Below the pieces are notes generated by a model that made no database searches, was not told the DNA's origin, and was given only the letters and a program-made list of their open reading frames with translations. From Diadema antillarum (Eukaryota), in contig NW_027271029.1 in assembly GCF_040938485.1 (NCBI RefSeq), positions 868,001 through 932,000 of the forward strand: a stretch of DNA of 64,000 nt. Reading direction: 5' to 3'. Of the stretch, positions 35,705-63,443 are shown piece by piece. The first letter of the stretch is position 1, and each line of letters starts with the position of its first letter. The position numbers and the translations under genes are program-made.

Positions 35705-35780
35705 ATGCCAGCCATCGTTCCGACCGATTCTGCCGGCGCGGCTTGGTCCGCGGAGTCATCGGGTGTCTCAACCGTCGAGA
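35705..35780 (+). CDS. DEG/ENaC isoform A, first coding exon (MPAIVPTDSAGAAWSAESSGVSTVE)
   Basis: GC-rich, with a consensus AGA|gtaagt donor in phase 1. Joins in frame to 36394 (A+AG = Lys, then MSG). Confidence 0.65.
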
Positions 35781-36393
35781 GTAAGTTAGTGTGGCCGACA
35801 TCGTGGAAGTAGATGCCATTTCCTGCAGAATATCATTCACAAGAATCAGACAAACTAAAACTGTATATTCTTCTGTGAAATTATTGTGTGACTAAAATGA
35901 CTTATCGATTTTCTATCAGAGAACGTTTCTTTCCTGATACATAAAGAATGTACTTGTCACCGTAAAATGTCGGGTTTTTTGTAATTAATACATTGTCTGA
36001 CTGTATGTTCAAGCTAGCAGTCTGCGGCTTTGCTTCAGCTACAGCTACACACCGTAGACATAAGTGTAACCATATATCATTATACTGAATTAGGAAAATG
36101 TGTAACCCAACGTAATGGAAATCTTGAAAGTCTCGGTTCAAATTGTATCCGCGCTCCTCATATGCTATGGAGAAAAACGACGTCCCTTGTTCCTGTATAT
36201 ATTGTGATTTTACTGTGGGAGAAGAAAATGATTTATCTTATTATGTTTCTCATAATTTATATGTTTTATTCCTTTTACAAATGATAGCTTATCAATCCTG
36301 GGATTATAATGTTTATAGCATCATCTGGAAGACATGTAATACAACATGACGGTTGATTTTAATAGTATCTGTTATTTTTTTTTCTTCATGCAG

Positions 36394-36887
36394 AGATGTC
36401 GGGGCTGAAAAAGGACTCGGAAGTGACATACCGTAAGAGCAATGCGACAATGTCTCAGAATCGGAAAAGGGTTCTGAGCACTGCAGCCGCCAACGAAGGC
36501 GTCGACGAAGACGAGCTCAATGCGTATCTCATGATCGGGTCGACACTCGAGAACACGGGCGCTCACGGCATCCCGAACATCATCCGCGCCAAGTCACCCC
36601 ACCGTCGTATTCTTTGGGCTGTGCTCTTCCTGGGCGGCGTCGGTTTCTTCCTCTGGCAAGGTGTGACCATTATCAAAAAGTACTATGACTACGACGTCGT
36701 CGTCAACCTCGACATCCAGTACGAATCGACTATCGACATGCCAGCCATCACCATCTGCAACATGAACCCAATCACGAACTCGAGCTTGAGCACATTTTCC
36801 AGTGAGCTGGAGCGACTGCTGGTCGAGGACCAAACTGTGGCAACGCCACCGATGCCAGCAGGTCCTACTGTAGCAGCGACAAGAATG
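36394..36887 (+). CDS. DEG/ENaC (amiloride-sensitive channel family) isoform A exon: N-terminus, HG motif, TM1, start of ectodomain
   Basis: ENTGAHGIPNI, RRILWAVLFLGGVGFFLWQ (TM1), PAITICNMNP. Acceptor ttcatgcag|, donor ATG|gtgagt in phase 0. Confidence 0.9.
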
Positions 36888-39149
36888 GTGAGTTTTTATC
36901 ACTATTTTTGTTTGTTTGTCTGTCTGTTGTCGAATCGCAACAGACATGTGGCCATTGTTTTGGTGTCTGTAAATATGTGATAGGGACACACACATTCACA
37001 AGTTCATACTTCATACACATGTTCATTCACACACACACAGATATAATCATATTATATACTGTATTATATGTGTATTCTTGTATGTATACGCATATGTATT
37101 TGCGTAACGATATATCTATTATGGCAGGCACCAGGCGAGTCACTTGTAATAACAATATTTTAGTCGCTTTTTAGAACCTTGATCAAAAGTTCATAACTTT
37201 TGTCTTACAAGTGTCTTCTTCAGTGGAGCATCTACTGACGGGTACTCATCATTTACAACAGTCAAACATGTTGTAAGCATTTAATTTTGGGTCTTTAAGT
37301 CCACTTCCCTGCTTGCTGTGACCTTATTATTATATATAATGAAACATTTCGAGATTTCAAGATTTACACTGGAAAGAAAACGACAACAAGCCAATCTAAG
37401 CCCGAAGACCACATTAATTTCTTTGAATACTGAAAGACAAATGACAACTAAATCGAAACATCAACAATTTTCAGTTCACTTTGCAAACATAGACAGGATG
37501 ATAGAGCACGAACCAAAGTCTGAGAATGATTATCTCTTTCAAGTGAATTGTCTGCGAGAGTACCCACGCATTTGTTTTTGTCAGAAACTATCCTGCGAAG
37601 TGGTGTTTCTGCAATTGTTGCCCCCCCTCCCCCCTCCCCGAAAACCCCCACATATGATTATAAGCAATGCTTCTTTAAGCGAGGGAAAACAAAACTGAGT
37701 CGCACGCTATTATTAATAAGCAGATGGAGCTTAAGGTTCATCTCATATTCGAAGGCGGGAAGGTGGTGGAAGATGGACTGGAAGGCATCTGTCGCCATGG
37801 TAACATCCCTTGAGTCTTTTGAAGGGTTTCTTCTGCATCAGCATGACAATGAGGAAGATAGATTTTTTTTTTGAACAGTGTAAAATCCCATACCTTGAAG
37901 ACTTCAACTTTTTCTCGATCGGTTAAACTCGGACCAAAAATATTCTGATTGCCAGACAGGCGTCGTGTATCGTCTTGTCTAGCAATAGTATTCAGGAATT
38001 CGCTGGTTCGAGTCTAACCCGAGTATGAATGCCCACGTTTGTTTGTTTTTTTCCATCATGTATTATGGCTACTTCTGAAACAATGAATTATCAGTGATTA
38101 TTGGCGTCGATAAAGGGCAATTTATCAATCAGTTGCAATTAAAACAAAATACTATTCGACGCCAAAATTCATTGATTTGAATGCTATGCTTACTTTCTTA
38201 AGGTGTCGATCAAATTAGTTTCTGAAAATACAATTTTGATTCTTTGCTGCACGACCGTACGGTCCAAAGTTAAAGAGAAAGAGAAAGCGACAAGTCGACA
38301 TTACATCAAAACGTAATGAAACGGACGAGCAGGCAAATGGGTTGCCAAGTGACGCCAGGACACCCTGAATGATACACTACCTCTGAGTGTGGGCACCCAT
38401 CATTATTTAAGTGAGTGCATGCCTGCCTCTTATATACGAGGTCACTTCCGTTTGTTTGCAATGGGTACATCGCTAGTTGTTTGTTTGTTTGTTTGTTTTA
38501 TAAGGTATCACTTATATAACTATCTCGTGTTTGCAACTTCGATGGCCAGAACCTATATCAATCAAAGTCAAATATCCTACATGCTGTAAATGATTATGAG
38601 TCAGCCTATACGAATGATTCAGACGATTGATATATTGTGGGAACGTTTGTTTCATCTTTACCGGACAGGACTGGTAGAAGCAAAATGGCGTACAATTCCA
38701 GCTACTCGTAACCATGGACTTACGTCGTAGGTCCATGTCGTAACAAACACCCATCAGGAATGACCTTCGACGGGGAGGGGGGGGGGGGTAGGCATTTAAT
38801 GTTAATCACTGCTTATTAGGTAGTCTCAATAGACTGTTTCTTTCGTGGAGCAGAGTTAGCGATTCGTCATTGTTCATTTGAGCATGGAGCTTCGTTGTAG
38901 CTCCATGATTATTTGAGTGATATTACGATCAAAACTGCATCATAATCGTCCGATGAGTCGAAAGCACCGGCAGAAGTTGACTGTATAGTGGAGACTTCAG
39001 TCCGTTTCATAGCAGGGCCCCTTTAATGACATCGCACAATGATTTCGTTAGCATGTTAACTCTCTGCACACCACATTATTTTTTTGACACGTTGACACGG
39101 ACAGGATTAATGAGGGAGAGGCGAATTACCAAATTCATTTATTTCCTTT

Positions 39150-39334
39150 TATGGGGATCGTTTGTTTTACTATGTCTTTGGATATCTCAGCCATTTCAAA
39201 ACCAAATTTCATCAAATAAATTTTGAATTCTTCTTAGAATTGTAGACTTCTTAACATTTCATAAACTGGTTTCTAAATATCTCGCAAAAAGGTAAATGCT
39301 GAATTCTCACCTTAGCCAATACGACACCATCCCT
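39150..39334. mobile_element. Right half of a TTAA (Kolobok-like) MITE, same family as 49165 and 62302
   Basis: ttggatatctcagccatttcaaaacc ... accatccct|ttaa. Confidence 0.7.
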
Positions 39335-42300
39335 TTAAGGTTCGAAGAGTGGGCAGCATTTAAGTAGTCACTATATCACGTATTTAACACTTCATACGTC
39401 TGCTCCCATCTGTTCAAATGTGGTTCACCGCTCTATATACAAAGTTCGCTAAAAAGAGCTTACACATGTAATCTCAGGTTTGATCTTCATGATCTATATG
39501 TATGGCTTCTCTGTTCACCGTTTTTAGGGTAAGGTAGAATTATATCAGTTGATGTTTCTCCGGGGTTTTCGTGGATGGAATGAAGAACTGATTGGCACCG
39601 GTACAAAGAAAGTAAAAATATAAAATAGAAATGTGCCAAGGATTTTGATGTGAGTGTCAACCCAGGAAACGGCACCTTCATGGGGTATACGATAGAGGGA
39701 GACGAATTCATTCTGAAATTCCATTTTCATTCGTGGTCTATAATAATTATGTAAATGTTAAACAGGGCTTGCGGCTGCAAAAGCATAAAAATACATTCAA
39801 ACCTCTGCGTGAAGAAGACGAAAAAAAAAAAGATTGTTTGTAACATAGGCGATTGATACAGCAGAATCTGCACTTGAGTGTATGAAAAATATGATTTCAT
39901 GCTATCAATCATAATCATGCACTAGCAACTGATATAAGCCACATGTTCATTCCTTCAACTATGGTGAAGTATTGGCTACTATCTCCACTGTATGAAAGAC
40001 CACCATCTTACATCTGAGATGAACCAGATCGCAAGTCAAAGGGGAACATATTAACCCAAAGGGATAAGGCGTAAACCACCTAACAAATCAATTTATGATA
40101 TTTCAAAAACAATGCTTCTCTATTGTTAAACAAATTTTCTTTCTCCTGCTATGTGGAAAATGGTTTTATATTAGGCAATACTTTGTGGTTCTGTACATAC
40201 GGTAAAGAAAATTTCACTTAATTTCTTGACCGAATTAAAGGACAGTGTTTCAGTCATCTGACATCTGACGTCATCTGACTCCATTTCATGCTTCAATGTA
40301 ATCACCGTCGTGATGGATCAATGGCGGGTGCCAGTATCCCGTTAGGAATATCAGAGTCAGGCCCGTATGACGACAAACGACAAACAAACGGCATACATGC
40401 CCAAACACCGTGTGCTGTACCGCGGTTAGAGTTCGTGATGTTGCAATGTTGTAAGATTTACAAATATCTGATAACTGTACCGCAGCAATTTAGGTTAATC
40501 TTTCGACAGCAGTCGGCAGCGAGATTGCTTGTGATTGATCACACCCCTGCTCAAATTTATGAAAAAAAAATACTTCGAAATCAGCGGGATGCGGGATATT
40601 GATTTACTTCTTTTTTTCTTTTTCTTTTGGCCTTATATGACATCACTTTCAAATCAATTAAGGTATCATACAATAAAGTTTCCCATTAAAAATTCACCAG
40701 TCTTTTATTTGGGTTCTTCGATTTGGTCAGATGCTTTAGATAGATGAATTTGAATGACAGTCTCGAGAACGAACACAAGCAAGCTAACCAACAAATAAAT
40801 ACATTTACATCTATGAATTCATACAGGCCCTCCGCATTTCAAAGTCCTTCAAAAGTCTAAGAAATAGACAAAACAAGCATTGCTTAACGAACAAAGATTA
40901 CACATTTGTCTTTGTTTACAAAACTTAGTTTAATTAAAGCGTAAATCATGTTTAACTTTTACAGTTACAAATAATTTATCTAAATACTGTCCACAATTTT
41001 TTTTTTAGGTTCTTAACCAGGTCCGTCTGAACCATATCGACTTTGCTTCTTTTCTAACCAATTGTTGAATTCTAAGGGATGATTTTTCTATGTAAATAAA
41101 ACATAATCGTCTGACAGTCTGATATGAGTTTCACATGCAAAGTAAGCTCAGACTGGGGTTTACCGGAGAATTTTCATCGAATTGGATGCACGACTCGAAT
41201 ATCATTTAAATTTTTGTATTCGTCAGTTTTCACATGAAACGCGGCACGCGCAAATATTTGCCCTCGCATTAGCGCGGCAATAAACCGATCTCGCGCACGC
41301 GATGTCAGAGTGGCGACGAATTACTAGATTCGCAGCAAATATGAAAAAATGAGCTTCATGATGGTTTCTTAATTAAGAATCCGTGGTCAAATTGTTCCTG
41401 CGTTTATGTGTAAATGAATGATTGTTTGTGGAAATCATCCGACGGAATTAGTCAATCTCAGTCCGCAGCGTGAGTTGACGCTTGAGTACAATGCCTTGCT
41501 GCAAAATAAAAATGCTAAAGATAATCAGCACTTGACTATTTCAATAAGCGCTATAGCTATAGTTAGAGTGTATCAAGGCAGGTTATAGACGATGTACTTC
41601 ATTGTAATGACGATCTATATGTGCTGCCAACGCTACAATTATTTTTTATCTAACTGACATTTGACTGACGAGGGAAATGTGCCACAGCGATAAAGACACG
41701 TTCGTTAAGGCAGCAGTGGAATGAAAGCGCAAATCTCCTCTATAATTACTAGCAAGCATTAAATAGAATCTAATGCTAATGAATTTGCCGTTATGTAACA
41801 CCACCTACAAAAACAGTGCTTCTGCTAAACTTACAAAAACCTGCTTAGAAGGAAGAAAAGAAAATAATAAAGACAACTTCAAGTTTTTAGTTTCTTTATT
41901 TCACCAAAGCAAGGAACATATTAAAAAAACAATACATACATCAATATTCGGATACGATTACAAACATATCAATAATACAGTGAAAAGGAAAAAATACAAC
42001 AGAAATAGATTGACAATTACACATACATAGGTTTAACAGATACCTGTAAGCTATGGAAGGTAGCAGCCAGAAAGGAGATGTCCCTTATTTATAGCTGACC
42101 TAAAATCATTCGTTCAATTTCAATTATCTATAGTGTGTTCAAATTGAAGTAAAACGTAAGAACAGGACAAGACAAGACAAGACAAAACAAAACACATAAT
42201 GACAATAACAAAATACGGGATGTCTTGAATCATAAAGAATAAAAGATTATACTCTTGACCTCAATGAGTTTGGCTATAATTATAAAAGAGAGGTTTTTTT

Positions 42301-43289
42301 TTGTAACCAGATTTAAATGTATTCAAAACTTATCGTTTTCCCCATCACGATCGAAGGAGAGAACACCTTACACGTGACAAAGGAGTTCGCCTTAGAAAAC
42401 CTTTGTAGAGCCTTCACAAAAGATGTCGTGGGGTCGTGAATTTGGTGGTATACATACTAATTAAATAATCAAACCACACCCGGGCATTATCGTCACACCT
42501 TGAGACTGTATGCGATAGTGTGGACGTTCCTATATAGCACACAGAGATTGATAAAAGGACGACATATCGACCGACGGGGAACATCTCTTTTTCGTCTGTA
42601 GTTGAATTGACACTAAAAGCTTTAACAAGCCTTCATACTAAGGTGAAAGCGGTCAAGGCACTGTGTTTTTTTTTTCATGTTTGTATCATTTCTAGCCTTA
42701 ATATACCACTGTTGAGATTGTATCATTATTCTTATCACCGTTATAGTTACCATTATTTTTATCTATTTATTTATCATTATTTTTATCATTGTCATTATTA
42801 CTATTGTCATTATCAGAAATAGGCATGTTATAGGTTAATCATCACTGGCACTTGTATCGCCAATCCCTTTCATAATTACATCAATCATTTCTTGTGACAA
42901 CGGCTAACAGGCGTGTATAGGCCTAGTAAAATTTTACGTTCAAGCGCTTTTTTTTTTCTCACACTTTTTTTTCCCTCCCTTTTGGCGCAAAGACCGGGAG
43001 TTAATGCATTGTAAATAATGACTTAATGGGACTGTATGGCAAGGGGAAATTAGAAATCAGGTTCGGACGCGCTGTCATGGACACCACAATCCATCAACTA
43101 TAACCCAATCAACGCACTCAAGGGTACGTCATGCAACCTGGCATTAATGTAGTCAGTATAATAACTCCTGTGCGCAATGACATTGGCGCCATAAATTGCC
43201 AGGATTTTGGCGCCAAATTGCCAGGAGTGCACACCGAACGCTATATTCCTATTTCAGTCGCCAATGGGACACCCGTTTCCAATGTTTAC

Positions 43290-43614
43290 ATCTCTCCCTT
43301 CCTCTCTCTCTCTCTCATCCTCATCCTCTCCTCATCCCCACCCTCCCTCCCCCTCTCTCTCCGTCCCTCCATCTCTCCCACTTTCTCTCTCTCTTTATTT
43401 ATCTATCTTATTGTCAATCTATTTATCTCCACCTGTTTATCCTCCACTGTCTTCTTTTCTTCTCCCTCTCGCTTACAATGTATTTCTTTTATATTCTTTC
43501 TCTTCCGCATCTTCCTCTTGCTTTTCTGTCTTTCCTCCCACACTCTCTCTCTCTCTCCCTCTCTCACGTCTCTGTCTCACTCTGTCTCTGTCTGTCTGTT
43601 TGTCTGTCTGTCTG

Positions 43615-43632
<18 letters not shown>
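43290..43632. repeat. CT-rich compound microsatellite
   Basis: (CT)n and (CTGT)n tracts. Confidence 0.9.
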
Positions 43633-43654
<22 letters not shown>

Positions 43655-47226: not shown

Positions 47227-47230
<4 letters not shown>

Positions 47231-47272: not shown

Positions 47273-47275
<3 letters not shown>

Positions 47276-49164
47276 CAGTATCATGTGACCAAGGATTAAA
47301 CCGTATACATATAGGTCCTACATATATACATATATTACAAAATCAGATCATTGTTATTATTGTAATATTCAAATGTTGTTACCGATCGTTTCCTCCATTA
47401 CACGTCTTATGTTCGTCAACATTGTTATCATCATTGTTTGATGTGGACCGTGTTGACACAGTAGCATACGTTGTGCCCGTGGGCATTATTATAAGAAACC
47501 AAAAATATTGTTAGACACCTGTGCGAAAGAGCCCGACTTTTCAAGAGGGGCAACGAATGAGATGAGACAAAATAAAGGTGATAGAAAGCATGTAGGGATG
47601 AGGAGAAAAAGAGAAGGTTGGTTCACATACATCCGAAAATAGAATGGTATAGTGGGCTTGCAAGAAGGTCATTATGACGTTTGACACGTTCATTACGCTC
47701 GTCACTTTATACGCGGCTTGAGACATTAGATAAACTTTGGGAGAAACTGGACTGGATTGATTATAATAATGTTCGCATTAGCCAATTTATCTTCGAGTGG
47801 GCTGATCGACTCGTAGACGAAATTTGAAATATTAGGTCTTGTTTTCGTTACCAACAGTCACTAAGCACTGGTCATTACTCGAGTTTGATTAGAAGCACTC
47901 CCACACAAGGAGGGTTCCTCTTACCACCGATTTGTTTTTGAAGCGATACGGCGGGGGTGCAACGCCGATGAGTAGATTAATTCTGACAGGATCAATCATG
48001 CGATTCTAATAGTCTGATATTCCCTAAAATGTGTCATGATTTCCATGGGACCGTAAAGAGAGATTTTAAATGAAAGCTGAAACTTATGAAGTTTTTTTTT
48101 TCACTTTTCATTTAAAGACAATTATGCCATATTTTATGTTCAACAGCTTGCGGTCATAAAACTCATTACAGAATTTTTCGACGGTAAAAGGAATTCTTGT
48201 AGAGAGATGGAGACAATAATGATGTAGGCCTTCGTATGCATGTCAGTGTGTGCGTTCGTTTTCATATACTGGCGTGTGTTTTTGCTTCAGGGCATCAATG
48301 TTTAAACATTATTCTGCTTTGAGACCTGTTTTTTTATGCATTATTTTGTTCAATGTCTGAAGCTATAATAGTGATAAAGTTTACATTATTCAAGCCACAA
48401 CCAATTGTTCTCACAGCCGTTGAAGTCTCTATACACGGTCTTGAATACAGTAGGACTGAATATACTTCGAGAGTACTATAACCAATTGCTATTGGGGGTG
48501 TAATTAATTAATGACTATGATATATATCTTTATAGTGTTTCAAGAATTTTTAAGAAAAGCGATTCAATTTTAGCAGGTAAGGACGAAAATAAAAGAGTAA
48601 TTGCGGGCGGTAGATAATCACTAGAGTAGTTTACTATTGTGTATCTTTTGGGATAGAAAATAACACGGCTTCCATTATAGTAAGATAGTACAACATATTC
48701 TGTTGCCAACTCGATGGCTAATCCCATCATCCACTTAATTTTGTTCCGAAATGCTATCGTGCGTCACACCCAGATCATCTATTATACCTGTCAACATTGA
48801 TCGATTCATCTTCACGAAGGATTGGGCTTCGCTTTTGATAATGTGGAAAATGGCTTTTGAGGAATGTTTCAATTTCACATGAGCTGACGTGGATGATGAG
48901 ATCACATATTCACGTAGCGGGGGAAAGGGAATGGATGTTGTTATGAGACATGTAAAACAGGGGCGGATCCAGGAATTTCGTGAAGGGGAGGCGCCTTTAC
49001 AAAATTAGATTGGGGCGCACTCGCCTCTCGATTTTCTTTTTCATTTTCTTTCTTTTATTTCTAACAAAAGAGGGAGAGGGGAGACAAGAGACAACGGTCA
49101 GGAGGGATTATAATATACGGATGGAGAGACGAAATGATTCTAGTGGCTCGTCAGTAAGTTTTAA

Positions 49165-49546: not shown

Positions 49547-51327
49547 TTAAGGCATCCTACCTTGATACAATGCAATACTTTAATGTCTTATTTCATTACT
49601 CCATAACTACTATTGAATGTTATGATTTATTGCTAAAGTATACATCAAAGAATACAAGTAGTAGTTAATTGTGGCAGGAGATGTGTCATAAGACATATGC
49701 TGTTGTAAATATAAGTAGCTTGTAAACTACAACATCATACTGACATTTTTTTTTTGAAGAAAAGGAAAAACTCATAATTTTGGGAACGCTTCACTCGTGG
49801 TTGACAGTGGTCGCGATTACATAAAAATTTCTGCGCTATATGAGGCGACTGAAACGTAAGACGTATTGAGTGTACCTAAAGGGTGGGGCATACATAGTGA
49901 AAAAAAAAAACCACCGTCATCTATACGGATAACACAAGAACAGCTGTTGTGTCTCATAATAAAAGATGACAATGCTATCCAATAAGAAAATGAGAGAGAT
50001 GGGGGGGGGGGGGTTATAGATTGGAGGAAAGAGCGACAGACGAAGAAGGAATGGAGGAGGTAGAAAATGGCATATACACGCGAGAGGATTTGAGGAAAGT
50101 GAGGAAACAACGGAAATGCTGTCGGGGCCATGCAGTTAGTGATCACCACAGCAACCAGAGTTAAAACCAAAAGCAGAAATGGCGGCGTAATGGTATACTT
50201 ATTGTGTCCATCATTAAAAGCGCATAGACCTATCAATTTGCTGACAGGTAATGCCTAGTGGTGTGGAAGAAAGTGATAGGCCTATCACTCCGTGATCTGG
50301 CGCATGCTCGCTGGCAGCAGGTGACTGTGCGGCAGGTAGAATGTTGTGGCCTCATCAATCAAACCTGTTAACTAAATACTGCATAACTGTCACTTTAAAC
50401 GACATCAGGACGAAGTTGTTTGTAGGTGTTAAACAAAGGTTTCAGTAAATATGAATGCCGCTATGACATTGGTCTTGCCGGATATGAAGTAAACCTAGAC
50501 GGGAAATGACAGCTCCCTGGGAATGCTGTATCGTCGAGTCTTTGGAAGGGTTAATACCGCGCTGTTTGCGACTGTCGACGAGTTAGCGAGTGAATGAGTG
50601 CCTGGCGATTCATTAAACCTGTCAATAGCTGCTCCAAGGACTCGCAAGAATCTCAGTGTGGCCTGATGACACTAATCCTGCCACTATCATCGATGAACAA
50701 TGCACATCCGAACGTCATAAGTATTATACGAAGCCCCAACTACTCCTGGTGATAACAACCGCTTTAGTGATTAGCGATTGCATAAATAACAGTCTCTGTT
50801 CTCGGTGACGATGCAAGCACAGCTGCCTTCACAGATTGGTTCTCTGGCGCCATTCCGGATCATCAACACGAACATTTTTAGGTATTGATTTAGCTCTAAC
50901 GAAAGGACAAAATCAGTCCAATATGACCAACGTCTAAGGATCTCAAGGTGCGCTAACACAACGCCGATTGTGTAATTTTGTTTTCATGCTGACTATAACC
51001 AGACATAACCGAGTTCATGTTTCGACGCTACTTATTTGATGCAAATGGTGGAACTTTTGGAAGATAGAGGTGTAATGATATTTTGTTTAAAAAAATGTAT
51101 TTGAAATCTGCGGTTAATAAATTTCAGACTTTGATGAGAATCATTTTGTGGTGACATGGTGACCACTGGTGAAGGATATTGACCTGATTTCAGGAGTCAT
51201 CAGCTTTGCGCGACGTCTGGCATTGCTGACATGGTTGAAAGACAACATTTTGATATACAGCTATCAGTGTTTTAAAGCCCGCCCATTCAATTGTTTTCAC
51301 ACCAGCTTGCCGAACACTGAGACGGCC

Positions 51328-51939
51328 ATGGCTACAAAGAATAAACAAACGAAGATCAAGAAAGTGGCCTGGTCTGATTCGTCGCGGGGATCTACCAAAC
51401 ATCTCGGAGGATTTCGTGTGCTCGATTACCTGAAGAGCTCGAGAGCGAAAAGCCCCGATACACGCGGAGGCGTTATATCGTCACAGTTTGACGAAGCGAA
51501 AGATCGCCAAACGATCACTAGTGATCGGGGAGACGAACAGGAGATTCTGTTTGTCGTTGGCTCACGAATTGGCGCCATCGGCGCGCACGGTCTTCCCAAC
51601 ATATATCGAGCGACGAATCCTTATCGACGTGGCCTCTGGCTTGCCATCTTTCTAGCCGGCCTTTGCGTGGTTCTCTGGCAATTCACGACGCTACTCATCG
51701 CTTACTTCAAGCACGATGTGAACATCAACACCGACTTTGTCCGACTTCGGCACCTCGACTTCCCCGCCATCACGGTCTGCAACCTGAATCCCATTATGGC
51801 ATCAAAACTCGATGAGCTGACCGAATATGGCCTCAATCGCGACGACATTTGGCCTGCCGAAACAGCCAGTTCAACGCAAGACTTGGAAGGAAGATCGAAT
51901 AATTCATCAACCAGACAATCTTTGTCGATGCGTGCCGAG
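51328..51939 (+). CDS. DEG/ENaC isoform B exon: N-terminus, HG motif, TM1, start of ectodomain
   Basis: gccATGG start after the acceptor ttttcacaccag| (51305). IGAHGLPNI, RRGLWLAIFLAGLCVVLWQ, FPAITVCNLNP. GAG|gtgatt donor in phase 0. Confidence 0.9.
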
Positions 51940-54748: not shown

Positions 54749-54924
54749 AAATATCAAGATTGGGAGAACGTGGATCTGACCGATCAGGACGACAGAGTCG
54801 ATAAGTTAGAGGAAGCGATCGATATTATCGGCAGCGCGCCCTATGACCAACGAAACGAGACCGGCCACAAACTGGATGATATGCTCCTCAGCTGCTACTT
54901 CCAGAATTTCCCCTGCTTTCCAGA
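54749..54924 (+). CDS. DEG/ENaC ectodomain exon (KYQDW...GHKLDDMLLSCYFQNFPCFPE)
   Basis: cttttcag| phase 0; GA|gtaaga phase 2. Family GHxLxDMLLxC motif. Confidence 0.9.
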
Positions 54925-55567: not shown

Positions 55568-55671
55568 AAATTTCACGCACTTTTACAACTACATGTACGG
55601 AAACTGTTTCACTTTCAACTCGGGTTCCAAGGGAAGAGTGTTAAATGTTTCCAAAATTGGACCGTTGTATG
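55568..55671 (+). CDS. DEG/ENaC ectodomain exon (NFTHFYNYMYGNCFTFNSGSKGRVLNVSKIGPLY)
   Basis: ctgcag| phase 2; G|gtgagt phase 1. YGNCFTFN signature. Not in the ORF track. Confidence 0.95.
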
Positions 55672-56103
55672 GTGAGTACACGTCAGTCGCCTCGATACGT
55701 TATTCTTTCCCCACTATAGTTCCGTTGTATCTGTGATGATGATAAATGAGAACTTATAAAGTGTTATCTCCACATCTGAAGACGTTCAGATGAAATCATT
55801 TAAATTCATTTTGGGAGTTCATCCCCAAAGTAAGGTCCTGCTCGGGCAAAAATCCTAACCCCATGAAAATTTTTGATCTTTGTAATTCAAACAAACCAGT
55901 GGATGAGGATTAAAGACATTTTGATGTGTTCACATTCTTATTTACATATTATTTTGCTATCACAGAGTAGTCTTTGAAATTTTGATATTCATTTCTTTAC
56001 ATATCAAGTATGAGTATAATCTTGGTATTGATTGTATTCAAAATTGAACGTGGTTTTAGTTAAAAGGTCAGTGTCCTATATGGGAAGGTTCAAATTGCCT
56101 TAA

Positions 56104-56465
56104 AGGGGATGGCTAGTAACTGATCAGTGGGATTCAGTGGGAATGCTGGGGGATGATTGTTCCAATTCTTGTGGGATTCATTTAAGAGTACATGATATAT
56201 CTATTGTTGTGTGAAAATTATTTGCTTCAGAATGGTCTCATATTCAAGTAATGTGCAGTTTAATGTTTCTAAGTTAGCGTGCCTGGTCAGTGACGGGGCA
56301 TTAATTTGCACATTACTTGAATATGAGACCATTCTGAAGCAAATAAATTTCACACAACAGTAGATATATAATGTATACTCTCAAATGAATCCCACAAGGA
56401 TTGGAATAATTATTATCCCTCAGCATTCCCAGTGATTCCCACTGATCGGTTACTAGCCATTCCCT
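56104..56465. mobile_element. Foldback MITE with TTAA TSD and ~160-bp inverted arms, in a channel intron
   Basis: ttaa at 56100-56103 and 56466-56469; aggggatggctagtaac / gttactagccattccct. Confidence 0.9.
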
Positions 56466-57096
56466 TTAAGCACCATGGCAAAAAAAACCAAAATAATAAT
56501 AAATAGACACATAGATTGATTTTACATTCGGATAGATTCCTCTTTCCAGTCATGACTTTGTGGTCTTGTTCAAAGTGAAGGTGAATTAATTACTTTTCAT
56601 GTAAATAAAAACAAAGGAAGTTCACAAATCATCCACATTGAATTGTACTTTAAAAGTTGGTAATATTTAGCATGAGGAGACAGAAGCTTGCTGATTCATT
56701 ATTGACCGATGAAATGCTTCTACATTATTCTGTATGCAATTAGTATTTATAATCAACACAAAATTATGATATGCATTCCGCTCTATGATTGTGGCTGATA
56801 TCACTGCAATCTGGAAGTCACCCATATTGTCAGTTTGTAGAACTGTTTGATATGTTTGCTATTTTGTGTTTCATTTGAATTAAATCTTGTCATCGTCATG
56901 TTTGTTTGTTTGTTTCAGGGAGGGTGGATTTGGTTAACGTTAACTCGAATAATGATGTGTCAGTTCCCTTTGCAAGAGGTTGCATATACCAGTATAGATA
57001 GATAGCATGTAACCTTTTTGGCTACTGTGAGCTTGTTATCAAAGACAAGCCAGCGTTCACTATATGTCGCCACCTGTCGGTGTATTTCTTTACTAG

Positions 57097-57260
57097 GCCT
57101 GTCTTTGGAGCTGTACATCGACCAGTCAGAGTACATCTCCACCATCCAACCCTCGGCGGGCATCCGGCTCTTGATCCACAACCAGCATGAGATGCCCTTC
57201 CCCGAGGACCAGGGCATCAATTTGGCGCCAGGGGCCCACACTTCGGTGGGACTATCGCTG
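57097..57260 (+). CDS. DEG/ENaC ectodomain exon (GLSLELYIDQSEY...AGIRLLIHNQHEMPFPEDQGINLAPGAHTSVGLSL)
   Basis: ttctttactag| phase 1; CTG|gtaggt phase 0. Conserved family motifs. Confidence 0.95.
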
Positions 57261-57529
57261 GTAGGTTGAAAACATACTTCCCATAGCATGTTCCTCTCCT
57301 TTTGATATGGGCGTGGTAGGGTGGGGTGGGGTGGGGTGTAGCGTTGGCGTAACCATCATACAAGTTTTGAAATGCTCTTAGAAAGTGTGTGTGTTGCGCT
57401 GATTATTATCGTTTTACGTGGTCATAAAATGCTTAGCTGTGGGATTGTTGCGCCCCGAGTTGCCATGTGCACTGAAGAACTATAGACAATGAAAACAAAG
57501 TTTGTGGACACCTATACGGACACTGACAG

Positions 57530-57590
57530 CTGCTGCTCCCGAGGGATTCGATACGGGAACCTCGAATTTGAGAGTCTTACTAGGTTTCAT
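57530..57590 (-). mobile_element. tRNA-derived SINE head remnant
   Basis: The reverse complement reads gactctcaaattcgaggttcccgtatcgaatccc, a B-box-like sequence. No full cloverleaf. Confidence 0.4.
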
Positions 57591-58140
57591 TCACTGACCT
57601 CCATATACAAATGATACACATCAGTGAGGGCGGTAGTAAGAATTACAAACACAATGTACTTTTGGAACAGTCTATTGGCTAGCCCAAAATCCATAAATGG
57701 ATATGCCGCATTTTAAGACATACATGTATATTTTTCAATGATATATTGTCGTTAGCACTATACATACCATGTAGGTGCCCGCATATGTATTTTTATTCTT
57801 AGTCAGTTTTAACTCTCTTTCTTTACTTTTTTCTGTTTGTTTGTTTGTGCAGACAACACGATATTGCCAGAAAATGGAAATTGTTTTGCTCCAGCCTCCA
57901 GTTGTACTCTTATCTCTCTCACACAGATATATTGAGTAAACACAGATTGATAGCAGTGTATAAGATGTTGAATTGGGTGGACCTATATAGAGTAGGAAAT
58001 GCATAATAGGGAAGTAGCGTTACATGATATCATACAGTGTGAAATGAATTTCAACTGATGTATAAAACGTGATACTCTGTCATATAGCGTGAAATGACAT
58101 TTATAAAGTGATGTATAAAATGTGACACTCTATTGTGCAG

Positions 58141-58245
58141 GTGGACATCGAGAGATTAGGACATCCTTACACGAACTGCTCCTTAGACTTCGCAGAAGGC
58201 AATATTTTTAGGGACAAGTTTTCCCATCTCGACTATTCAAGATCG
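58141..58245 (+). CDS. DEG/ENaC exon (VDIERLGHPYTNCSLDFAEGNIFRDKFSHLDYSRS)
   Basis: gtgcag| and TCG|gtaaga, phase 0/0. RLGxPYxxC motif. Confidence 0.95.
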
Positions 58246-58529
58246 GTAAGAGAGCCATCGATATACTGATCAAGAAATATTGGTCAGTCAGTTGTCACGG
58301 TTGTGTTTTCGTGTAAGCCAGGTGTATTTTGGAAAGAGAGTAAATAATATGAAGTTGAAGGTCGCCGGACAGAATGCATTTTTTGATTCTGCATCACTGT
58401 CCTCATTTTGCTGTTGTTGTTGTTTTGTTGTTGTTTGTGGTGGTGGTGGTGGTTGCGGTGTTGTCATTAATTGTTGCTGTTGTTGTTTTTTCTCTTTACA
58501 CGAGTAATGTCTATATCCCCTATACTGTC

Positions 58530-59021
58530 TTTATTGCCCCCGCCATGAAGTGTTGACGGACATGACGGAGGCATTATGTTTTCGGGATGTCCGTCCATCC
58601 GCCGTCCTTCTGTCTGTCCGTTCGTCCTTCCGTCAAAGGTCAAAGGTAGAGTGAAAATGCTAAAAATCTACTATTTAACGCTGAAATCGCTTCTTTTCTC
58701 CATACCTTTGAGGTCACTCAATGCATAAACTTAATAAACTTAATAAAACTAACGAAAATGTTCAAATCCCTAAATATCTGCACTCATAAACAATTTGCCA
58801 TCCACTCCGATGAGACCTAGCTCAAGGAAAGTAAAAATTCAAAACGTTTTTGACATACATGTCAATATTGGAAAAATGCCTGTTTACAAAAAAAAAATGC
58901 CAATTTTTGTCACTTATGAGAAACTGTCGTCCCACAATTTCAAGATATATTCTAAACCTACTCGGAGAACCATGCATCATGGCGGAGGCATACCCGTCTC
59001 CATAGCAACATTCATAGTTTT
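58530..59021 (+). mobile_element. HINE/Helentron-like non-autonomous element in an intron
   Basis: Subterminal inverted repeat tgcccccgccatga / tcatggcggaggca, (gtcc)n microsatellite, aaaggtcaaagg motif, T-run at the 3' end. Confidence 0.65.
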
Positions 59022-59046
59022 CTTCTATCTCTCTCTTTGTTTCTAG

Positions 59047-59161
59047 ACTTGTGAGAAGAATTGCTTCTTCAAAGGAGTGCTGGAAAACTGTAAATGCGCC
59101 GATCCTCGCTACCGATACGATAACTCGATCCCTGTGTGCAACACTTCGATTCCCAGAATAG
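59047..59161 (+). CDS. DEG/ENaC Cys-rich thumb exon (TCEKNCFFKGVLENCKCADPRYRYDNSIPVCNTSIPRI)
   Basis: ttctag| phase 0; G|gtaaca phase 1. CxxxC...CxC pattern. Confidence 0.9.
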
Positions 59162-59356
59162 GTAACAGACATCGTGTGAATACATAGTTGCTATAAGTAA
59201 TAACAAAGGATTACCCACTTCTGCGATGATAACGATTTACTTTACGTTTTTTCATATTCGATTTGCAGGTAAATCAAAATAGTCATCCGATGCCATGGTG
59301 TACATGTACTTGGTATATCTTACCAACTTTTCAGTATAATCGGATGCAGCAAACCC

Positions 59357-59545
59357 NNNNNNNNNNNNNNNNNNNNNNNNNNNNNNNNNNNNNNNNNNNN
59401 NNNNNNNNNNNNNNNNNNNNNNNNNNNNNNNNNNNNNNNNNNNNNNNNNNNNNNNNNNNNNNNNNNNNNNNNNNNNNNNNNNNNNNNNNNNNNNNNNNNN
59501 NNNNNNNNNNNNNNNNNNNNNNNNNNNNNNNNNNNNNNNNNNNNN
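59357..59545. other. Assembly gap (189 N), intronic
   Basis: Run of n. The flanking exons 59161 and 59908 join in frame without it. Confidence 1.
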
Positions 59546-59907
59546 ATCGGAAGAGAGATTCTTGTCAACATGAATCATACGATTTTGGCGGGCATGCAAA
59601 ACATCTGATTTGTGGCCATGGTGTTATTCCTACTTTTTGAGACGACCATGATTTCATCTTCAAACATATAAAGTCAAAAGAAGCTGCGTATCTCGATCAT
59701 TGAAGAAAGAAATTCACCGTGGATATCAATGCATAGCACCATTTGTCTTTCATCATTCCTTGTAAATAAGTCTGCAAATTAGCACTTATGTTTTAGATGT
59801 CATGCATCCTGATTGCAAAATTGATTGGGATGTCTTGTCGAGTTCGTTGCTTGATTTTTAGATCCTCTATAATAAAGTAGTAATATTTGCCTCTTTTTGC
59901 CTTGCAG

Positions 59908-59980
59908 ACGAGTGTGTTGATCAGATTGAGGAAAATTATACCCTGGGTTTAATTCCGTGCAACTGTACAATGCCTTGCCG
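59908..59980 (+). CDS. DEG/ENaC thumb exon (DECVDQIEENYTLGLIPCNCTMPCR)
   Basis: cttgcag| phase 1; CG|gtaagt phase 2. CxCxxPC motif. Confidence 0.95.
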
Positions 59981-60768
59981 GTAAGTATGTCTACCCATCG
60001 CCCTTATTTTACGCAGACACGCATAGACGCTAATCAAATGCAGTCAAAAATATTATATACTGAGTATACAATTACCAAGTCACACACATTTCAATCAAGT
60101 GACTAAGATTGCCACCACTATAGCTGAAGCCCTATGTCCTTATTTTACACGCGTATATAGTATACTGGCGTGTAAAGGTGTAGGTTCTGGGATCGAATCC
60201 TGCCCGAAGCATGCACCCCCAGGACCAGATATCTCAGCTTTATTCGTAAACTAACATGGTACATGCTATTATGGCGCAATCAATATACAATCACAAAGTC
60301 GGTACATAAAATGAAAGAGCGTTAAAAGGAATCAGCATTAAAAATTGAAATAAAGGTTTTATGATTATAGAAGTATTGCTATACAAATAAACCTAAATCT
60401 TAGAGAGAAAAAAAAAACAATGAATCAGGGCAACTGTCGAATCCTGTAATAAGAATAGAGGCAAGTCTCGCTTACAGAACGTCCCATTCGCTGTGCATAT
60501 TATGAAGAGTGTAGATAATATACAAGGACACGCATTTGCCGGTCAATTACGATTATTATTATCACCATTTTGTTCTATAATTCTTATTATTATCTATAAT
60601 TCGTTATATACAATGATGTGCTCGAGCTTTTTTAAGTGTTGTTATACATAATTTGTAAGACTTTCCAACATACATCCGATTTCGAATCAATCCCTGCGAT
60701 GTGGATACTGCAGATTTGCATATTGAAACATGTTTGTGTTCTCTTCCGCCTCTGTCTAATTCATGCAG

Positions 60769-60826
60769 TCAACAAAACTATCATTACACGATATCCGAAG
60801 CTCACTGGCCCAACGATGGATATATG
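60769..60826 (+). CDS. DEG/ENaC exon (QQNYHYTISEAHWPNDGYM)
   Basis: catgcag| phase 2; ATG|gtaaga phase 0. YxxxIS...WP motif. Confidence 0.9.
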
Positions 60827-61493
60827 GTAAGATTTAATACATTTTTAGTTATTTGAAAAACCTGCAGACGGATGTTGTCATATATGAATTTAAAGTTGAC
60901 GTAGTTTGTATGCATAATGTAAGAATGTAGGCCTACTTCTGTTGATGTGCCCATACATGGATGTTACTTTACAGTACAATATAATAGGCAATTGCGTGAT
61001 CAAACGTGAAACAGATGTCAGGAGATAATCCATGTGTGCTGTCGAAACGTATTCCATTATAAAAGTTGTGTTGGTTTTAATGTGTTGGTAAATTCTGCTT
61101 TCCCCTCAGTTTATGTGGCGTGATGTTGAAATCTTGTTTACTGCTTTCGATTAAGTTTTGTTGCATTTTTTTTTTAGTTTGTTTGTTGAAGCTAGTGTCG
61201 CATCTTTTGATTTGAAATGTGCTCTGTAAATTAGATTTGCTTTCAAATCAAGATTGGTTGTGAAAAAAAAAAATCATCTTGACTGATTCCTAATGAACTT
61301 GATGCTGTAAACCAACTTTACCTCTCTCGACATAATTTTGCCTTTGACACGAGGCTTACTTACTGCTTTTCTCGATCAAAAAAAAAAATGTCATTAAGAA
61401 GTCTGCTTAACTCTTCATTAACGTTATATTTTGTAGGAAAGGGTCTTATACCGTCTGTCGTATTTCATTTTTTAAATGTTTTCTCACTTCCAG

Positions 61494-61570
61494 GACGAAG
61501 TCAAGGAGGGAATCGCAGAAATATCAGACTCACTTAGAAGACAGCTTACTCAGGATCCTAATTTTATTGA
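61494..61570 (+). CDS. DEG/ENaC exon (DEVKEGIAEISDSLRRQLTQDPNFIE)
   Basis: ttctcacttccag| phase 0; GA|gtgagt phase 2. Phases fit both neighbours. Confidence 0.85.
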
Positions 61571-62195
61571 GTGAGTAGAGCTGGCCCATGAGGTACACGC
61601 CCATGCGAGAAAGCTTTGAAAGTGTAATGATGGTTGTCGTACTATGGCGACATCGAATATCGATGAGAGCATAATCATTATGTACTGATACGGTCTTACA
61701 GGCCTACAATAATTATGCTCTCTGCGTTTGGAGTTTCTGGTTTAAAACTATTGGCAGAGGTGACTCAAAATAGTGGAGGCACCGCGAGGCTCATGGTTTC
61801 ACACAGAACTCGAAATTAGGCAGAATAATAATATATTTGTTGACATTCTCAGTAATAAGAAAATAATCTAGTATACACGGAGGAAGGGGAAAATGAGACA
61901 AGAAGTGGTGAATGCGATGTTCGTGTAGTAGATGAATCCTACTGTGTTCGTCGAAGCAGTGCCTGATATCACAATATTGTTTTTATGACATCGTTTCACA
62001 AACTATGAACTCTTTGGGAAATGTTGTCATAAAAAGTGGCGTCATTTTCTAAACAGCATAATATGGAGTGCAAACATTTTCAACACTCTGAAATAGTTGA
62101 AAATATAATCACGCGAAACTCCCTTAAAAAACTACTATACAACGCTATTTTCGAGACCCTGTAATATTGCTCAGGTGGGGATTTCTTATCAAGTA

Positions 62196-63220
62196 TTTTG
62201 TCGAGTCCACCGGAGGTGAGGGGAGACTGAAGATCGCATGCGGCGTCTGTCCGTCCGTCGTCCGTCCGCCCGTAAAACAAACTTTTAGGGCTCATTGTTA
62301 AAGGGATAGTACAGTATTGGTGGAGATGAGAGTTGGGCTTTTAACTTTTTGCGAGATACCAAGAAAACACTTGTGAAATACATGTAGTACAGAGAATACC
62401 ATTCCAAGAGGAATTCAAAGTTTATTTGATGACAATCGGGTTTGGAAAAACAAAGTAAAACAAAGTGATCGTAAAAAAGTGTGGGTCCCACACTTTATCA
62501 GAATCGCTCTGTTTTGGATATCTCAGCCATTTCAAAACCAATTTTCATCAAATAAACGTTGAATTCCTCATGGAATTACACGCCCTTTCATATTTCATAA
62601 AGGTGTCTTATTATCTCACACACACACACACACACAAATGTTAGAAACCTGAAATTACGTCTCAACCAAAACTATACGATCCTTTTAAGTTTTTCCGGTG
62701 TGTTTCGATTGTTGATATGGCTCATAATTTTTTATGTATAATGCGATGTCCGTTTGTGACCAAACTTGGTTGGTAGATGTTTCTTGGGGAGTTGAAGGTC
62801 ACCACAAGGTCAAAGGTCACAAACAGGGGGTCAATTAGCTTTTAGGGCTTAATGTTAAGTTTTTACGGCGCGTTTTGATTATGGCTCATAACTTTTGATC
62901 CCTATTTGCGTTTGTGACCAAACTTGGATGGTAGACGTCCCTTGGGAAGTTGAAGTTCATACAAGGTCAAAGGTCACAGACAGGGGTCAATTAGCTTTTA
63001 GGGCTTAATGTTAAGTTTTTTCGGCGCGGTTTGATTATGGCTCATAACTTTTGATCCATATGTCCGTTTGTGACCAAACATGGCAGGTAAATGTCTCTTG
63101 GGGAGTTGAAGGTCACCACAAGGTCAATGGTCATGGGCGACGTCAATGAACTTCCGAGAGTTAGAAAAACAATACTTCTTCTACGCGAATGGGCGGGACA
63201 CATTTTGGCACTTGCCCTGT
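62196..63220 (+). mobile_element. Second HINE-like element with 156-158-bp units (family of 6923-8010), interrupted by a TTAA MITE
   Basis: Same ccaccggaggtg head and gaatgggcg(g/a)gacacatttt tail. Units at 62794, 62952 and 63108. Confidence 0.75.
62302..62684. mobile_element. Nested TTAA (Kolobok-like) MITE
   Basis: ttaa at 62298-62301 and 62685-62688; agggatagtaca / tatacgatcctt. Homologous to 49165-49546. Confidence 0.85.
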
Positions 63221-63367
63221 TTTTTTGTTTTTGTTGGGTTTTTTCCCCGTAATTTTCATCATCATCAGTAGTATATAATATAAGATATATCTATTCAACT
63301 TTCTACTTTCATCAGCACCATCATAATCATCGTCTGTGTGTTTTTCTACACTATTATATTCCCGCAG

Positions 63368-63443
63368 AGATAATGTGGTTAAAGTCGGCGTTTTCTACGA
63401 CAATCTGCAGTTCCAGTATATATACCAGACGCCAGCTTACGAC
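63368..63443 (+). CDS. DEG/ENaC pre-TM2 exon (DNVVKVGVFYDNLQFQYIYQTPAYD)
   Basis: ccgcag| phase 2; GAC|gtaagt phase 0. Matches the family NxxKxxxFY...PAY segment. The TM2 exon is outside the window; the window ends in a pyrimidine tract (...tttctctgta), probably its acceptor. Confidence 0.9.

What the first reader, a model, noticed from the sequence alone, without database searches (positions are those of the whole stretch)
35705..63443. One DEG/ENaC ectodomain, two alternative N-terminus/TM1 exons (ASIC1a/1b-like architecture)
Seen: two intact exons (36394-36887, 51328-51939) each encode N-terminus, HG, TM1 and PAITxCNxNP. My hand alignment gives 38/79 identical residues over the core. Both end in phase 0 and fit the phase-0 acceptor at 54749. 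Reading the 14.4 kb between them, I found no GNCxTFN, FPEDxG, thumb or TM2 exons, and the strong GT donors I checked had no open exon. Established: vertebrate ASIC1 and ASIC2 use alternative first exons covering this region to make a/b isoforms with different gating and permeation. Inference: an old partial tandem duplication gave this invertebrate ENaC-like gene two promoters and two pore-proximal modules sharing ectodomain and TM2, possibly a convergent origin of that design. Both ORFs being intact despite ~50% divergence argues that both are under selection.
Basis: partly seen in the sequence, partly recalled or inferred. Interest (0 to 1): 0.82.

Follow-up and report, generated by a model that had tools for sequence, protein, structure and literature searches.

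The report
Sea-urchin sodium-channel gene, two N-termini
A sea-urchin (Diadema antillarum) DEG/ENaC channel gene has two old, intact alternative exons for its N-terminus and first membrane helix ahead of one shared ectodomain, the layout known from vertebrate ASIC1a/1b but evolved separately, and genome annotators already list both isoforms in other urchins.

Summary
Exon A (36394-36887) and exon B (ATG 51328 to 51939) each encode the cytoplasmic N-terminus, HG motif, TM1 and FPAITxCNxNP of a DEG/ENaC subunit. They share 42/93 identical residues. Both end in phase 0 and fit the acceptor at 54749.

tBLASTn with 48 relatives and a profile search of all six-frame ORFs find one ectodomain exon set (54749-63443). 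Neither finds any in the 14.4 kb between A and B. The N gap lies inside an intron.

The window is Diadema antillarum. NCBI models there join A to 54749 (on the second haplotype copy) and B to 54749. In Lytechinus variegatus and Strongylocentrotus purpuratus, annotated isoforms are identical after this point and differ only in an A-type or B-type N-terminus.

In a tree of N-terminal exons, A and B form separate clades, each holding Diadema and camarodont urchins. The duplication therefore predates that split.

The gene lies outside the ASIC clade, and its swap boundary falls one exon earlier than in ASIC1a/1b. The resemblance is convergent.

Not shown: two promoters. Both exons start at acceptors. 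TM2 lies just beyond the window. Exon B evolves fast in Diadema. No transcript data were available.

Verdict: a real new member of a known kind, of moderate interest.

The parts
35705..35780 (+). Upstream exon spliced to exon A in the NCBI models. It carries an ATG, but the peptide it adds is not conserved among urchins, so it is probably mostly 5' UTR.
   Evidence: Threading of XP_071488657.1. The N-terminal extensions differ completely in Diadema, L. variegatus and L. pictus.
36394..36887 (+). Exon A: alternative N-terminus / HG motif / TM1 / FPAITxCNxNP module (ATG at 36396, ends in phase 0).
   Evidence: One synonymous difference in 494 nt against the second haplotype copy. Core dN/dS 0.02 against D. 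setosum. An acceptor 2 nt before the ATG is conserved in three urchins.
49071..49096 (+). 26-nt mini-exon that the NCBI 805-aa model uses to link exon A to exon B. It may be part of a 5' UTR exon of the B transcript. Its status is doubtful.
   Evidence: In D. setosum an indel of about 155 nt sits at its 5' edge, while its donor is conserved.
51306..51939 (+). Exon B: second alternative N-terminus / HG / TM1 / FPAITxCNxNP module. The acceptor AG ends at 51305, the ATG is at 51328, and the exon ends in phase 0.
   Evidence: 0 of 612 nt differ from the second haplotype copy. Intact and free of indels in D. setosum.
54749..54924 (+). First shared exon (KYQDWENV...CFPE), the phase-0 acceptor used after either A or B.
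55568..55671 (+). Shared ectodomain exon (GNCFTFN motif).
57097..57260 (+). Shared ectodomain exon (FPEDQG motif).
58141..58245 (+). Shared ectodomain exon.
59047..59161 (+). Shared ectodomain exon (Cys-rich thumb region), the last exon before the gap.
59357..59545 (.). Assembly gap lying inside an intron. No coding residues are missing across it.
59908..59980 (+). Shared ectodomain exon, the first after the gap.
60769..60826 (+). Shared ectodomain exon.
61494..61570 (+). Shared ectodomain exon.
63368..63443 (+). Penultimate exon (palm strand before TM2). The final TM2/C-terminus exon lies beyond the window end, at 64093-64332 in window numbering.

Best explanation
This is one DEG/ENaC channel gene of the sea urchin Diadema antillarum. 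It makes two subunit isoforms by using either exon A or exon B before the common exon at 54749. The two isoforms share the whole ectodomain from the finger onward, TM2 and the C-terminus. They differ in the cytoplasmic N-terminus, the pre-TM1 HG motif region, TM1 and the first 40-70 extracellular residues. The exon pair came from a tandem duplication of this one exon before diadematoid and camarodont urchins separated, and both copies have been kept since. By analogy with ASIC1a/1b (inference, not tested), the swap should change gating kinetics, permeation or trafficking rather than ligand recognition, and A and B subunits could assemble into mixed trimers. Shown here: the anatomy, the splice-phase fit, the single ectodomain set, conservation across urchins, and isoforms in public annotations. 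Inferred: mutually exclusive use in Diadema itself, and any functional difference. Open: whether there is one promoter or two.
For: Both exons are intact ASC N-terminal modules with canonical splice sites and matching phases. Only one ectodomain exon set exists in the window. The A-isoform (P0161) and the B-isoform (P0160 residues 207-805) each give one complete Pfam ASC match, 2-455 and 7-455 of 455 positions at 318 and 312 bits, and each has two hydrophobic segments. NCBI models use A to 54749 and B to 54749 in Diadema. In L. variegatus, isoforms X1/X3 and X2 are identical over the last 389 residues but have A-type or B-type N-termini. S. purpuratus X2 and X4 are identical over their last 276 residues in the same way. 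The L. variegatus locus has the order 5' exon, A (17881-18396), B (27083-27604), shared exons from 33357. In L. pictus, A lies about 10 kb upstream of B on the same strand. In the N-terminal exon tree the A clade has support 95/94 and the B clade 100/98, each holding Diadema plus camarodonts. Orthologous identity (0.50-0.55) exceeds A-versus-B identity within a species (0.42-0.43). Against the second haplotype copy, exon A differs at 1 of 494 nt and exon B at 0 of 612, while introns differ by 1.84% (Poisson P 1e-3 and 1e-5). dN/dS for A is 0.18 (Diadema pair) and 0.16 (Lytechinus pair). The B core gives 0.22 in Lytechinus.
Against: I could consult no RNA-seq, cDNA or CAGE data; all transcript evidence is second-hand, through Gnomon models. 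On this very contig NCBI predicts an 805-aa protein that contains A and B in series through a 26-nt mini-exon. In the newest S. purpuratus and L. pictus annotations, exon A stands alone as a protein of about 205 aa that reads through its donor. Exon B evolves fast in Diadema: its terminal branch is 0.59 against 0.06-0.09 for A. Its dN/dS against D. setosum is 0.59 overall and 0.43 in the core, on few changes.
Confidence: 0.85

Rival explanations
1. Exon A is a stand-alone remnant. It is transcribed with the upstream exon but ends just after its donor, giving at most a truncated N-terminus/TM1 protein of about 200 aa. Only exon B makes a full channel subunit.
For: The current S. purpuratus (XP_030832318.1, 206 aa) and L. 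pictus (XP_063955476.1, 204 aa) annotations model exon A in exactly this way, reading five codons into the intron.
Against: Exon A's phase-0 donor and its core sequence are conserved in four urchin genera, with core dN/dS 0.02 in Diadema. Four other annotation sets join A to the shared exons: L. variegatus X1/X3, S. purpuratus X1-X3 and X5, the second D. antillarum haplotype copy, and D. setosum. The joined product is a complete ASC domain.
Confidence: 0.06
2. A and B are constitutive exons of one long transcript, the 805-aa NCBI model XP_071488657.1. The protein then carries two N-terminus/TM1 modules in series.
For: The reading frame stays open through A, the 26-nt mini-exon and the 22 nt before B's ATG. 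NCBI predicts this on the window's own contig.
Against: The product would have three hydrophobic segments, which puts the ectodomain on the wrong side of the membrane. The open linker is only 16 codons, and about 46% of such stretches would be open by chance. A direct A-to-51306 splice hits a stop after four codons (sequence). The mini-exon's 5' edge is disrupted in D. setosum. No other urchin model has this form.
Confidence: 0.04
3. Exon B is losing function in the Diadema lineage (relaxed constraint). In this genome the gene is then effectively an exon-A gene with a decaying spare exon.
For: Exon B has a long terminal branch (0.59). Its dN/dS against D. setosum is 0.59 overall and 0.43 in the core. 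NCBI models on the second haplotype copy and in D. setosum skip it.
Against: It is a 612-nt ORF without a stop or indel in both Diadema species, while the flanking introns differ by 10.6% with many gaps. It shows no difference between haplotypes where about 11 are expected. The HG motif, TM1, FPAIT.CNLNP, the donor and the upstream acceptor are all kept. The model on this contig splices B to 54749.
Confidence: 0.05

Closest known systems
Vertebrate ASIC1a/ASIC1b (ACCN2) and ASIC2a/ASIC2b (ACCN1) splice variants
   Same: One gene yields two alternative 5' coding modules that replace the N-terminus, TM1 and the proximal ectodomain, while the rest of the protein is identical (PMC2151504, PMC4967927). 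The urchin gene has the same logic and the same family fold.
   Different: It is not an orthologue. The urchin gene sits in an echinoderm/hemichordate clade outside the ASIC clade and outside vertebrate ENaC. The variable part is shorter. ASIC1a-specific sequence runs to residue 185 (PMC2151504), which aligns with the urchin intron 54924|55568. The urchin swap ends one exon earlier, at roughly ASIC1 residue 124. Both urchin exons are internal, each preceded by an acceptor site. No functional data exist for the urchin gene.
Human ENaC beta/gamma/alpha subunits (best solved-structure matches, 6wth/9blr)
   Same: These are the highest sequence similarity to any solved chain (E 2e-60 for ENaC beta against 3e-48 for ASIC1). 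They share the HG motif, TM1, FPAxTxCN, the Cys-rich ectodomain and a G-x-S stretch in TM2.
   Different: Vertebrate ENaC diversity comes from separate alpha, beta, gamma and delta genes, not from swapped TM1 exons in one gene. The urchin gene is not inside the ENaC clade.
Tandem-duplicated, mutually exclusive exons in other ion-channel genes (for example SCN-alpha exon 5a/5b; PMC12772994, PMC9741552)
   Same: An old tandem exon duplication gives homologous, interchangeable protein segments that are conserved across long times.
   Different: Here the duplicated unit is the start-codon exon, which covers a third of the protein including a whole transmembrane helix. Alternative promoters cannot be ruled out as the selection mechanism.
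Brittle star Amphiura filiformis orthologue-group gene (XP_072050209.1 locus)
   Same: Three tandem N-terminus/TM1 exons lie before a single ectodomain exon set. Two are intact and one is frameshifted.
   Different: The three copies form their own clade (100/99) and are 61-79% identical to each other, so this is a separate and younger multiplication. No isoforms using the upstream copies were seen.

Membership tests
DEG/ENaC (Pfam ASC, PF00858) | Full-length match to the ASC profile above the gathering score | tested here: met
   The A-isoform matches positions 2-455 of 455 at 318 bits. The B-isoform matches 7-455 of 455 at 312 bits. The cut-off is 23.6 bits.
DEG/ENaC (Pfam ASC, PF00858) | Two transmembrane segments flanking a large ectodomain | tested here: met
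   Kyte-Doolittle windows give 98-120 and 518-540 in the A-isoform, and 101-127 and 532-554 in the B-isoform.
DEG/ENaC (Pfam ASC, PF00858) | Pre-TM1 His-Gly motif and post-TM1 FPAxTxCN motif | tested here: met
   Exon A has GAHGIPN and MPAITICNMNP. Exon B has GAHGLPN and FPAITVCNLNP.
DEG/ENaC (Pfam ASC, PF00858) | G/S-x-S selectivity-filter stretch in TM2 | tested here: met
   WIGVSVLTIFE is in the last exon, read from the NCBI proteins and locus L002. That exon lies outside the window.
DEG/ENaC (Pfam ASC, PF00858) | Amiloride-sensitive cation conduction as a trimer | not testable with these tools
   This needs heterologous expression and electrophysiology.
ASIC clade (proton-gated channels) | Phylogenetic placement within the bilaterian ASIC clade | tested here: not met
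   In the ectodomain tree the ASIC sequences (mammalian ASIC3, nemertean and crinoid ASIC-like) form a 99-supported clade that excludes this gene. The gene sits in a 98-supported echinoderm group (quick tree).
ASIC1a/1b-type alternative N-terminus/TM1 architecture | Two homologous alternative exons for N-terminus plus TM1 plus proximal ectodomain, with shared downstream exons | tested here: met
ASIC1a/1b-type alternative N-terminus/TM1 architecture | Transcripts use one or the other exon | tested here: inconclusive
   Annotated isoforms in L. variegatus and S. purpuratus do so. In Diadema one model uses A alone and one uses A plus B. No transcript reads were available.
ASIC1a/1b-type alternative N-terminus/TM1 architecture | Same exon boundary as in ASIC1 (residue 185) | tested here: not met
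   The urchin boundary lies one exon (59 residues) earlier (PMC2151504).
ASIC1a/1b-type alternative N-terminus/TM1 architecture | Separate promoters / true first exons | not testable with these tools
   Both exons start at acceptor sites 2 nt (A) and 22 nt (B) before their ATGs. Transcription start sites are unknown.

The most novel reading that the evidence does not exclude
The N-terminus/TM1 cassette of DEG/ENaC channels may be a recurrently duplicated, swappable module. It would have been duplicated independently in vertebrate ASIC1 and ASIC2, in the urchin stem lineage (A/B, kept since before the Diadema-camarodont split) and again as a triplet in a brittle star. One gene could then supply several pore-proximal variants, and mixed trimers, on a single sensor domain. 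The rapid change of exon B in Diadema would then reflect adaptive retuning rather than decay.
Probability: 0.45. Interest if true: 0.6.

Novelty: new member of a known kind. Interest (0 to 1): 0.45.

Why it matters
Swapping the N-terminus/TM1 module is how vertebrates get ASIC1a/1b and ASIC2a/2b, whose gating and toxin responses differ. An independent, anciently conserved case in a non-ASIC echinoderm channel, with a second case in a brittle star, suggests this third of the subunit is a natural tuning cassette across the family. It offers a ready-made natural chimera pair (identical ectodomain and TM2, different TM1 side) for structure-function work in an uncharacterised clade. It also flags annotation errors: the 805-aa double-N-terminus model in Diadema, and the stand-alone 'mec-4-like' fragments in S. 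purpuratus and L. pictus.

Tried and rejected
1. A hidden second ectodomain set between A and B was rejected. tBLASTn at E up to 50 gave only hits under 20 bits, and the profile search gave a best E of 0.21, in low-complexity sequence near a (TA)n run.
2. Another DEG/ENaC gene elsewhere in the window, on either strand: none found.
3. A missing exon in the N gap was rejected on protein colinearity and splice phases.
4. Origin of A and B from different paralogous genes was not resolved. A groups weakly with an urchin paralogue and two sea-star genes (83-92 support), but a tree that holds A and B together is not rejected (p-AU 0.17).
5. The sea star Asterias amurensis orthologue-group locus has no duplicated N-terminal exon inside the gene. 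There the region is split into two exons, and a further copy downstream belongs to the next gene.
6. Rfam found no RNA family in the window.
7. Pfam found nothing in the five other long ORFs I submitted.
8. Four literature searches, and reading PMC9949801, found no description of alternative N-terminal exons in echinoderm DEG/ENaC genes.
9. The first paper search failed on a slash in the term.
10. The look-up of encoding contigs has no record for the shorter isoforms P0001, P0157 and P0166.
11. The scan's earlier notes held nothing on this locus.


Full report
**What is in the sequence**

Window 36396-36887 translates without a stop into 164 residues. Window 51328-51939 translates into 204 residues. 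Each holds a basic cytoplasmic tail, a GAHG(I/L)PN His-Gly motif, a hydrophobic TM1 and (M/F)PAITxCNxNP. Pfam places them on positions 2-91 and 7-107 of the 455-position ASC profile, at E 5e-21 and 4e-18. BLASTP aligns them at 42/93 identities, E 4e-30.

Exon A starts at an acceptor two bases before its ATG (tttttcttcatgcag|AG ATG) and ends ATG|gtgagt. Exon B ends GAG|gtgatt. The exon at 54749 starts ttttcag|AAA TAT.

**Source and gene model**

A HMMER search of 1.8 billion representatives with exon A returned sea-urchin proteins. A word-indexed search with the best full-length hit returned two Diadema antillarum models that match the window at 96-100%. The locus fetched for one of them (L002, GCA_040938485.1 contig JBFRCO010000141.1) is the window itself, at an offset of 25704.

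Threading that model on the DNA gives these exons, all GT-AG:
- 35705-35780
- 36394-36887 (exon A)
- 49071-49096
- 51306-51939 (exon B, ATG at 51328)
- 54749-54924
- 55568-55671
- 57097-57260
- 58141-58245
- 59047-59161
- 59908-59980
- 60769-60826
- 61494-61570
- 63368-63443
- a last exon at 64093-64332, which carries TM2 and lies beyond the window

A and B end in phase 0, and 54749 is entered in phase 0.

**The gap**

The gap at 59357-59545 lies between exon 59047-59161 (leaves in phase 1) and exon 59908-59980 (enters in phase 1). Residues 411 and 412 of the annotated protein sit on either side of it. The Lytechinus protein shows no extra residues there. The gap is therefore intronic. I read no gap letters from other copies.

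**One ectodomain only**

tBLASTn with 48 full-length relatives hit A, B and one series of exons from 54749 on, and nothing else on either strand. At E up to 50, the interval 36888-51305 gave only noise below 20 bits. A profile HMM of the shared part was run with all filters off against 3866 six-frame ORFs. It found every real exon at E 3e-27 to 8e-3. The best interval hit had E 0.21 and lay next to a (TA)n run.

**Both junctions are in public models, and the design is conserved**

- *Within Diadema.* XP_071483146.1 (585 aa), on a second contig, joins A to 54749. That contig is 97-98% identical to the window and is evidently the other haplotype. XP_071488657.1 (805 aa), on this contig, runs A, the mini-exon and B, then 54749. 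The D. setosum orthologue is A-type.
- *L. variegatus.* XP_041464720/22 (isoforms X1 and X3) carry an A-type N-terminus and XP_041464721 (X2) a B-type one. The three have consecutive accessions and are identical over the last 389 residues.
- *S. purpuratus.* Isoforms X2 and X4 of one gene are identical over their last 276 residues and differ in the same way.
- *Loci.* The L. variegatus locus has a 5' exon at 10001, A at 17881-18396, B at 27083-27604 and shared exons from 33357. In L. pictus, A lies about 10 kb upstream of B on the same strand.

**Age of the duplication**

A tree of the 98-column core of the N-terminal exon puts the four A-type sequences in one clade (support 95/94) and the four B-type sequences in another (100/98). 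Each clade holds Diadema plus the camarodonts. Orthologous identities are 0.50-0.55, within-species A-versus-B identities are 0.42-0.43, and cross-species A-versus-B identities are 0.37-0.40.

The duplication therefore predates the split of Diadematoida from Echinacea. From memory of published urchin time trees, that split is of the order of 200 million years or more. A tree holding A and B as sisters is not rejected (p-AU 0.17), so a single exon duplication in the urchin stem remains the simplest account.

**Constraint**

- *Between the two D. antillarum haplotypes.* Introns differ by 1.84%. Exon A differs at 1 of 494 nt (a synonymous GAC/GAT change) and exon B at 0 of 612. The Poisson P values are 1e-3 and 1e-5.
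- *Exon A against D. setosum.* dN/dS is 0.18, and 0.02 in the core, with 13 synonymous changes and 1 replacement.
- *Exon B against D. setosum.* There is no stop or indel, but dN/dS is 0.59 overall and 0.43 in the core, on 9 changes. Introns differ by 10.6%.
- *L. variegatus against L. pictus.* A gives 0.16. B gives 0.70 overall but 0.22 in the core; the changes cluster in the tails.

Exon B also has a long terminal branch in Diadema (0.59 against 0.06-0.09 for A). Long-term conservation of B is secure. Its recent constraint in Diadema is weaker than that of A.

**How the exons are chosen**

Neither exon is a true first exon. The acceptor two bases before A's ATG is conserved in three urchins. 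B has an acceptor 22 nt (Diadema) or about 19 nt (Lytechinus) before its ATG. The peptide added by the upstream exon is not conserved, so that exon is probably 5' UTR.

The 26-nt mini-exon has a good acceptor and donor. In D. setosum, however, an indel of about 155 nt sits at its 5' edge.

Joining A, the mini-exon and B keeps the frame open, but only over 16 codons. The resulting 805-aa protein has three hydrophobic segments, which does not fit the family topology. I read it as a merged annotation. Whether B transcripts start at their own promoter or at the exon-1 promoter cannot be told from sequence.

**Place in the family**

The A-isoform and the B-isoform (P0160 residues 207-805) each give one complete ASC match. 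The best solved relatives are human ENaC beta, gamma and alpha (E 2e-60 to 4e-53), then ASIC1 (3e-48).

An ectodomain tree puts the gene in an echinoderm group within an echinoderm/hemichordate radiation. It lies outside the clade of ASIC sequences and apart from vertebrate ENaC (quick tree).

ASIC1a and ASIC1b differ in their first third, up to residue 185 of ASIC1a (PMC2151504). Chicken ASIC1 residues 160-231 align with residues 226-297 of the urchin protein. The ASIC1 boundary therefore matches the urchin intron 54924|55568. The urchin swap ends 59 residues earlier. Together with the tree, this makes the likeness convergent.

**A second case**

In the brittle star Amphiura filiformis, the locus of a gene from the same echinoderm group has three tandem N-terminus/TM1 exons before one ectodomain set. 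One is an intact ORF at 1427-1912, one is frameshifted at 4448-4913, and the third is the annotated exon at 9983-10459. The three form their own clade with 100/99 support, so this is a separate multiplication. The sea star Asterias amurensis shows none within the gene.

**Likely working (inference)**

The pre-TM1 His-Gly region forms a re-entrant loop implicated in gating and ion selectivity in ASIC1 (title of PMC7308080). In ASIC1a/1b the alternative first third changes how the channel responds to psalmotoxin (PMC2151504). In ASIC2a/2b the variants differ in surface trafficking (PMC4967927).

The urchin isoforms keep the same ectodomain from the finger onward. They should therefore sense the same stimulus but differ in kinetics, permeation or trafficking, and they may co-assemble.

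**Novelty**

Four literature searches found no paper on this. The isoforms are already present in NCBI's automatic annotations. This is a new member of a known kind.

Noticed in passing
window 35705-64000 (model XP_071488657.1): NCBI's 805-aa 'acid-sensing ion channel 1C-like' model on this contig strings exon A, a 26-nt mini-exon and exon B together. The product has two HG/TM1 modules and three hydrophobic segments. It is probably a merged annotation of two isoforms.
   Followed up: yes
window 49071-49096 and 49097-49160: The 26-nt mini-exon has a strong polypyrimidine acceptor. A second, stronger donor-like site (TCA|GTAAGT) lies near 49153 and is conserved in D. setosum, while the mini-exon's 5' edge carries an indel of about 155 nt there. 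The true 5' UTR exon of B transcripts may differ from the annotated one.
   Followed up: partly
L005:1427-1912, 4448-4913, 9983-10459 (Amphiura filiformis CM076869.1): Three tandem N-terminus/TM1 exons lie upstream of one ectodomain exon set in a brittle-star DEG/ENaC gene. Copy 2 has a frameshift near 4741. Only the third copy is in the annotated protein.
   Followed up: partly
L003 (D. antillarum contig JBFRCO010000050.1) against window 32744-64000: The same assembly holds a second copy of the whole locus at 94-98% identity. This looks like an uncollapsed haplotype, and it was given a different gene model and product name.
   Followed up: yes
L007 (L. pictus) and S. purpuratus XP_030832318.1: In these annotations exon A stands alone as a 'degenerin mec-4-like' protein of about 205 aa that reads five codons past its donor (…STER|VRCLH*).
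   Followed up: partly
window 62746-63133 and 7198-7777: A 156-nt unit repeated 2.5 times sits in the intron before the penultimate exon. Related sequence (about 87% identical) lies at 7.2-7.8 kb of the window. It is probably a dispersed repeat or minisatellite element.
   Followed up: no
window 1278-3221 (+): A 647-codon open frame has no Pfam match and only weak atlas look-alikes (scores 0.72 or less, all disordered-type proteins). It may be a large exon of an unrelated upstream gene.
   Followed up: partly
window 43104-43760: This CT-rich low-complexity stretch (CTCT microsatellite, 16-nt repeats) gives long spurious ORFs in three frames of the A-B intron.
   Followed up: no
window 19707-19869: A second assembly gap (163 N) lies outside the finding.
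   Followed up: no
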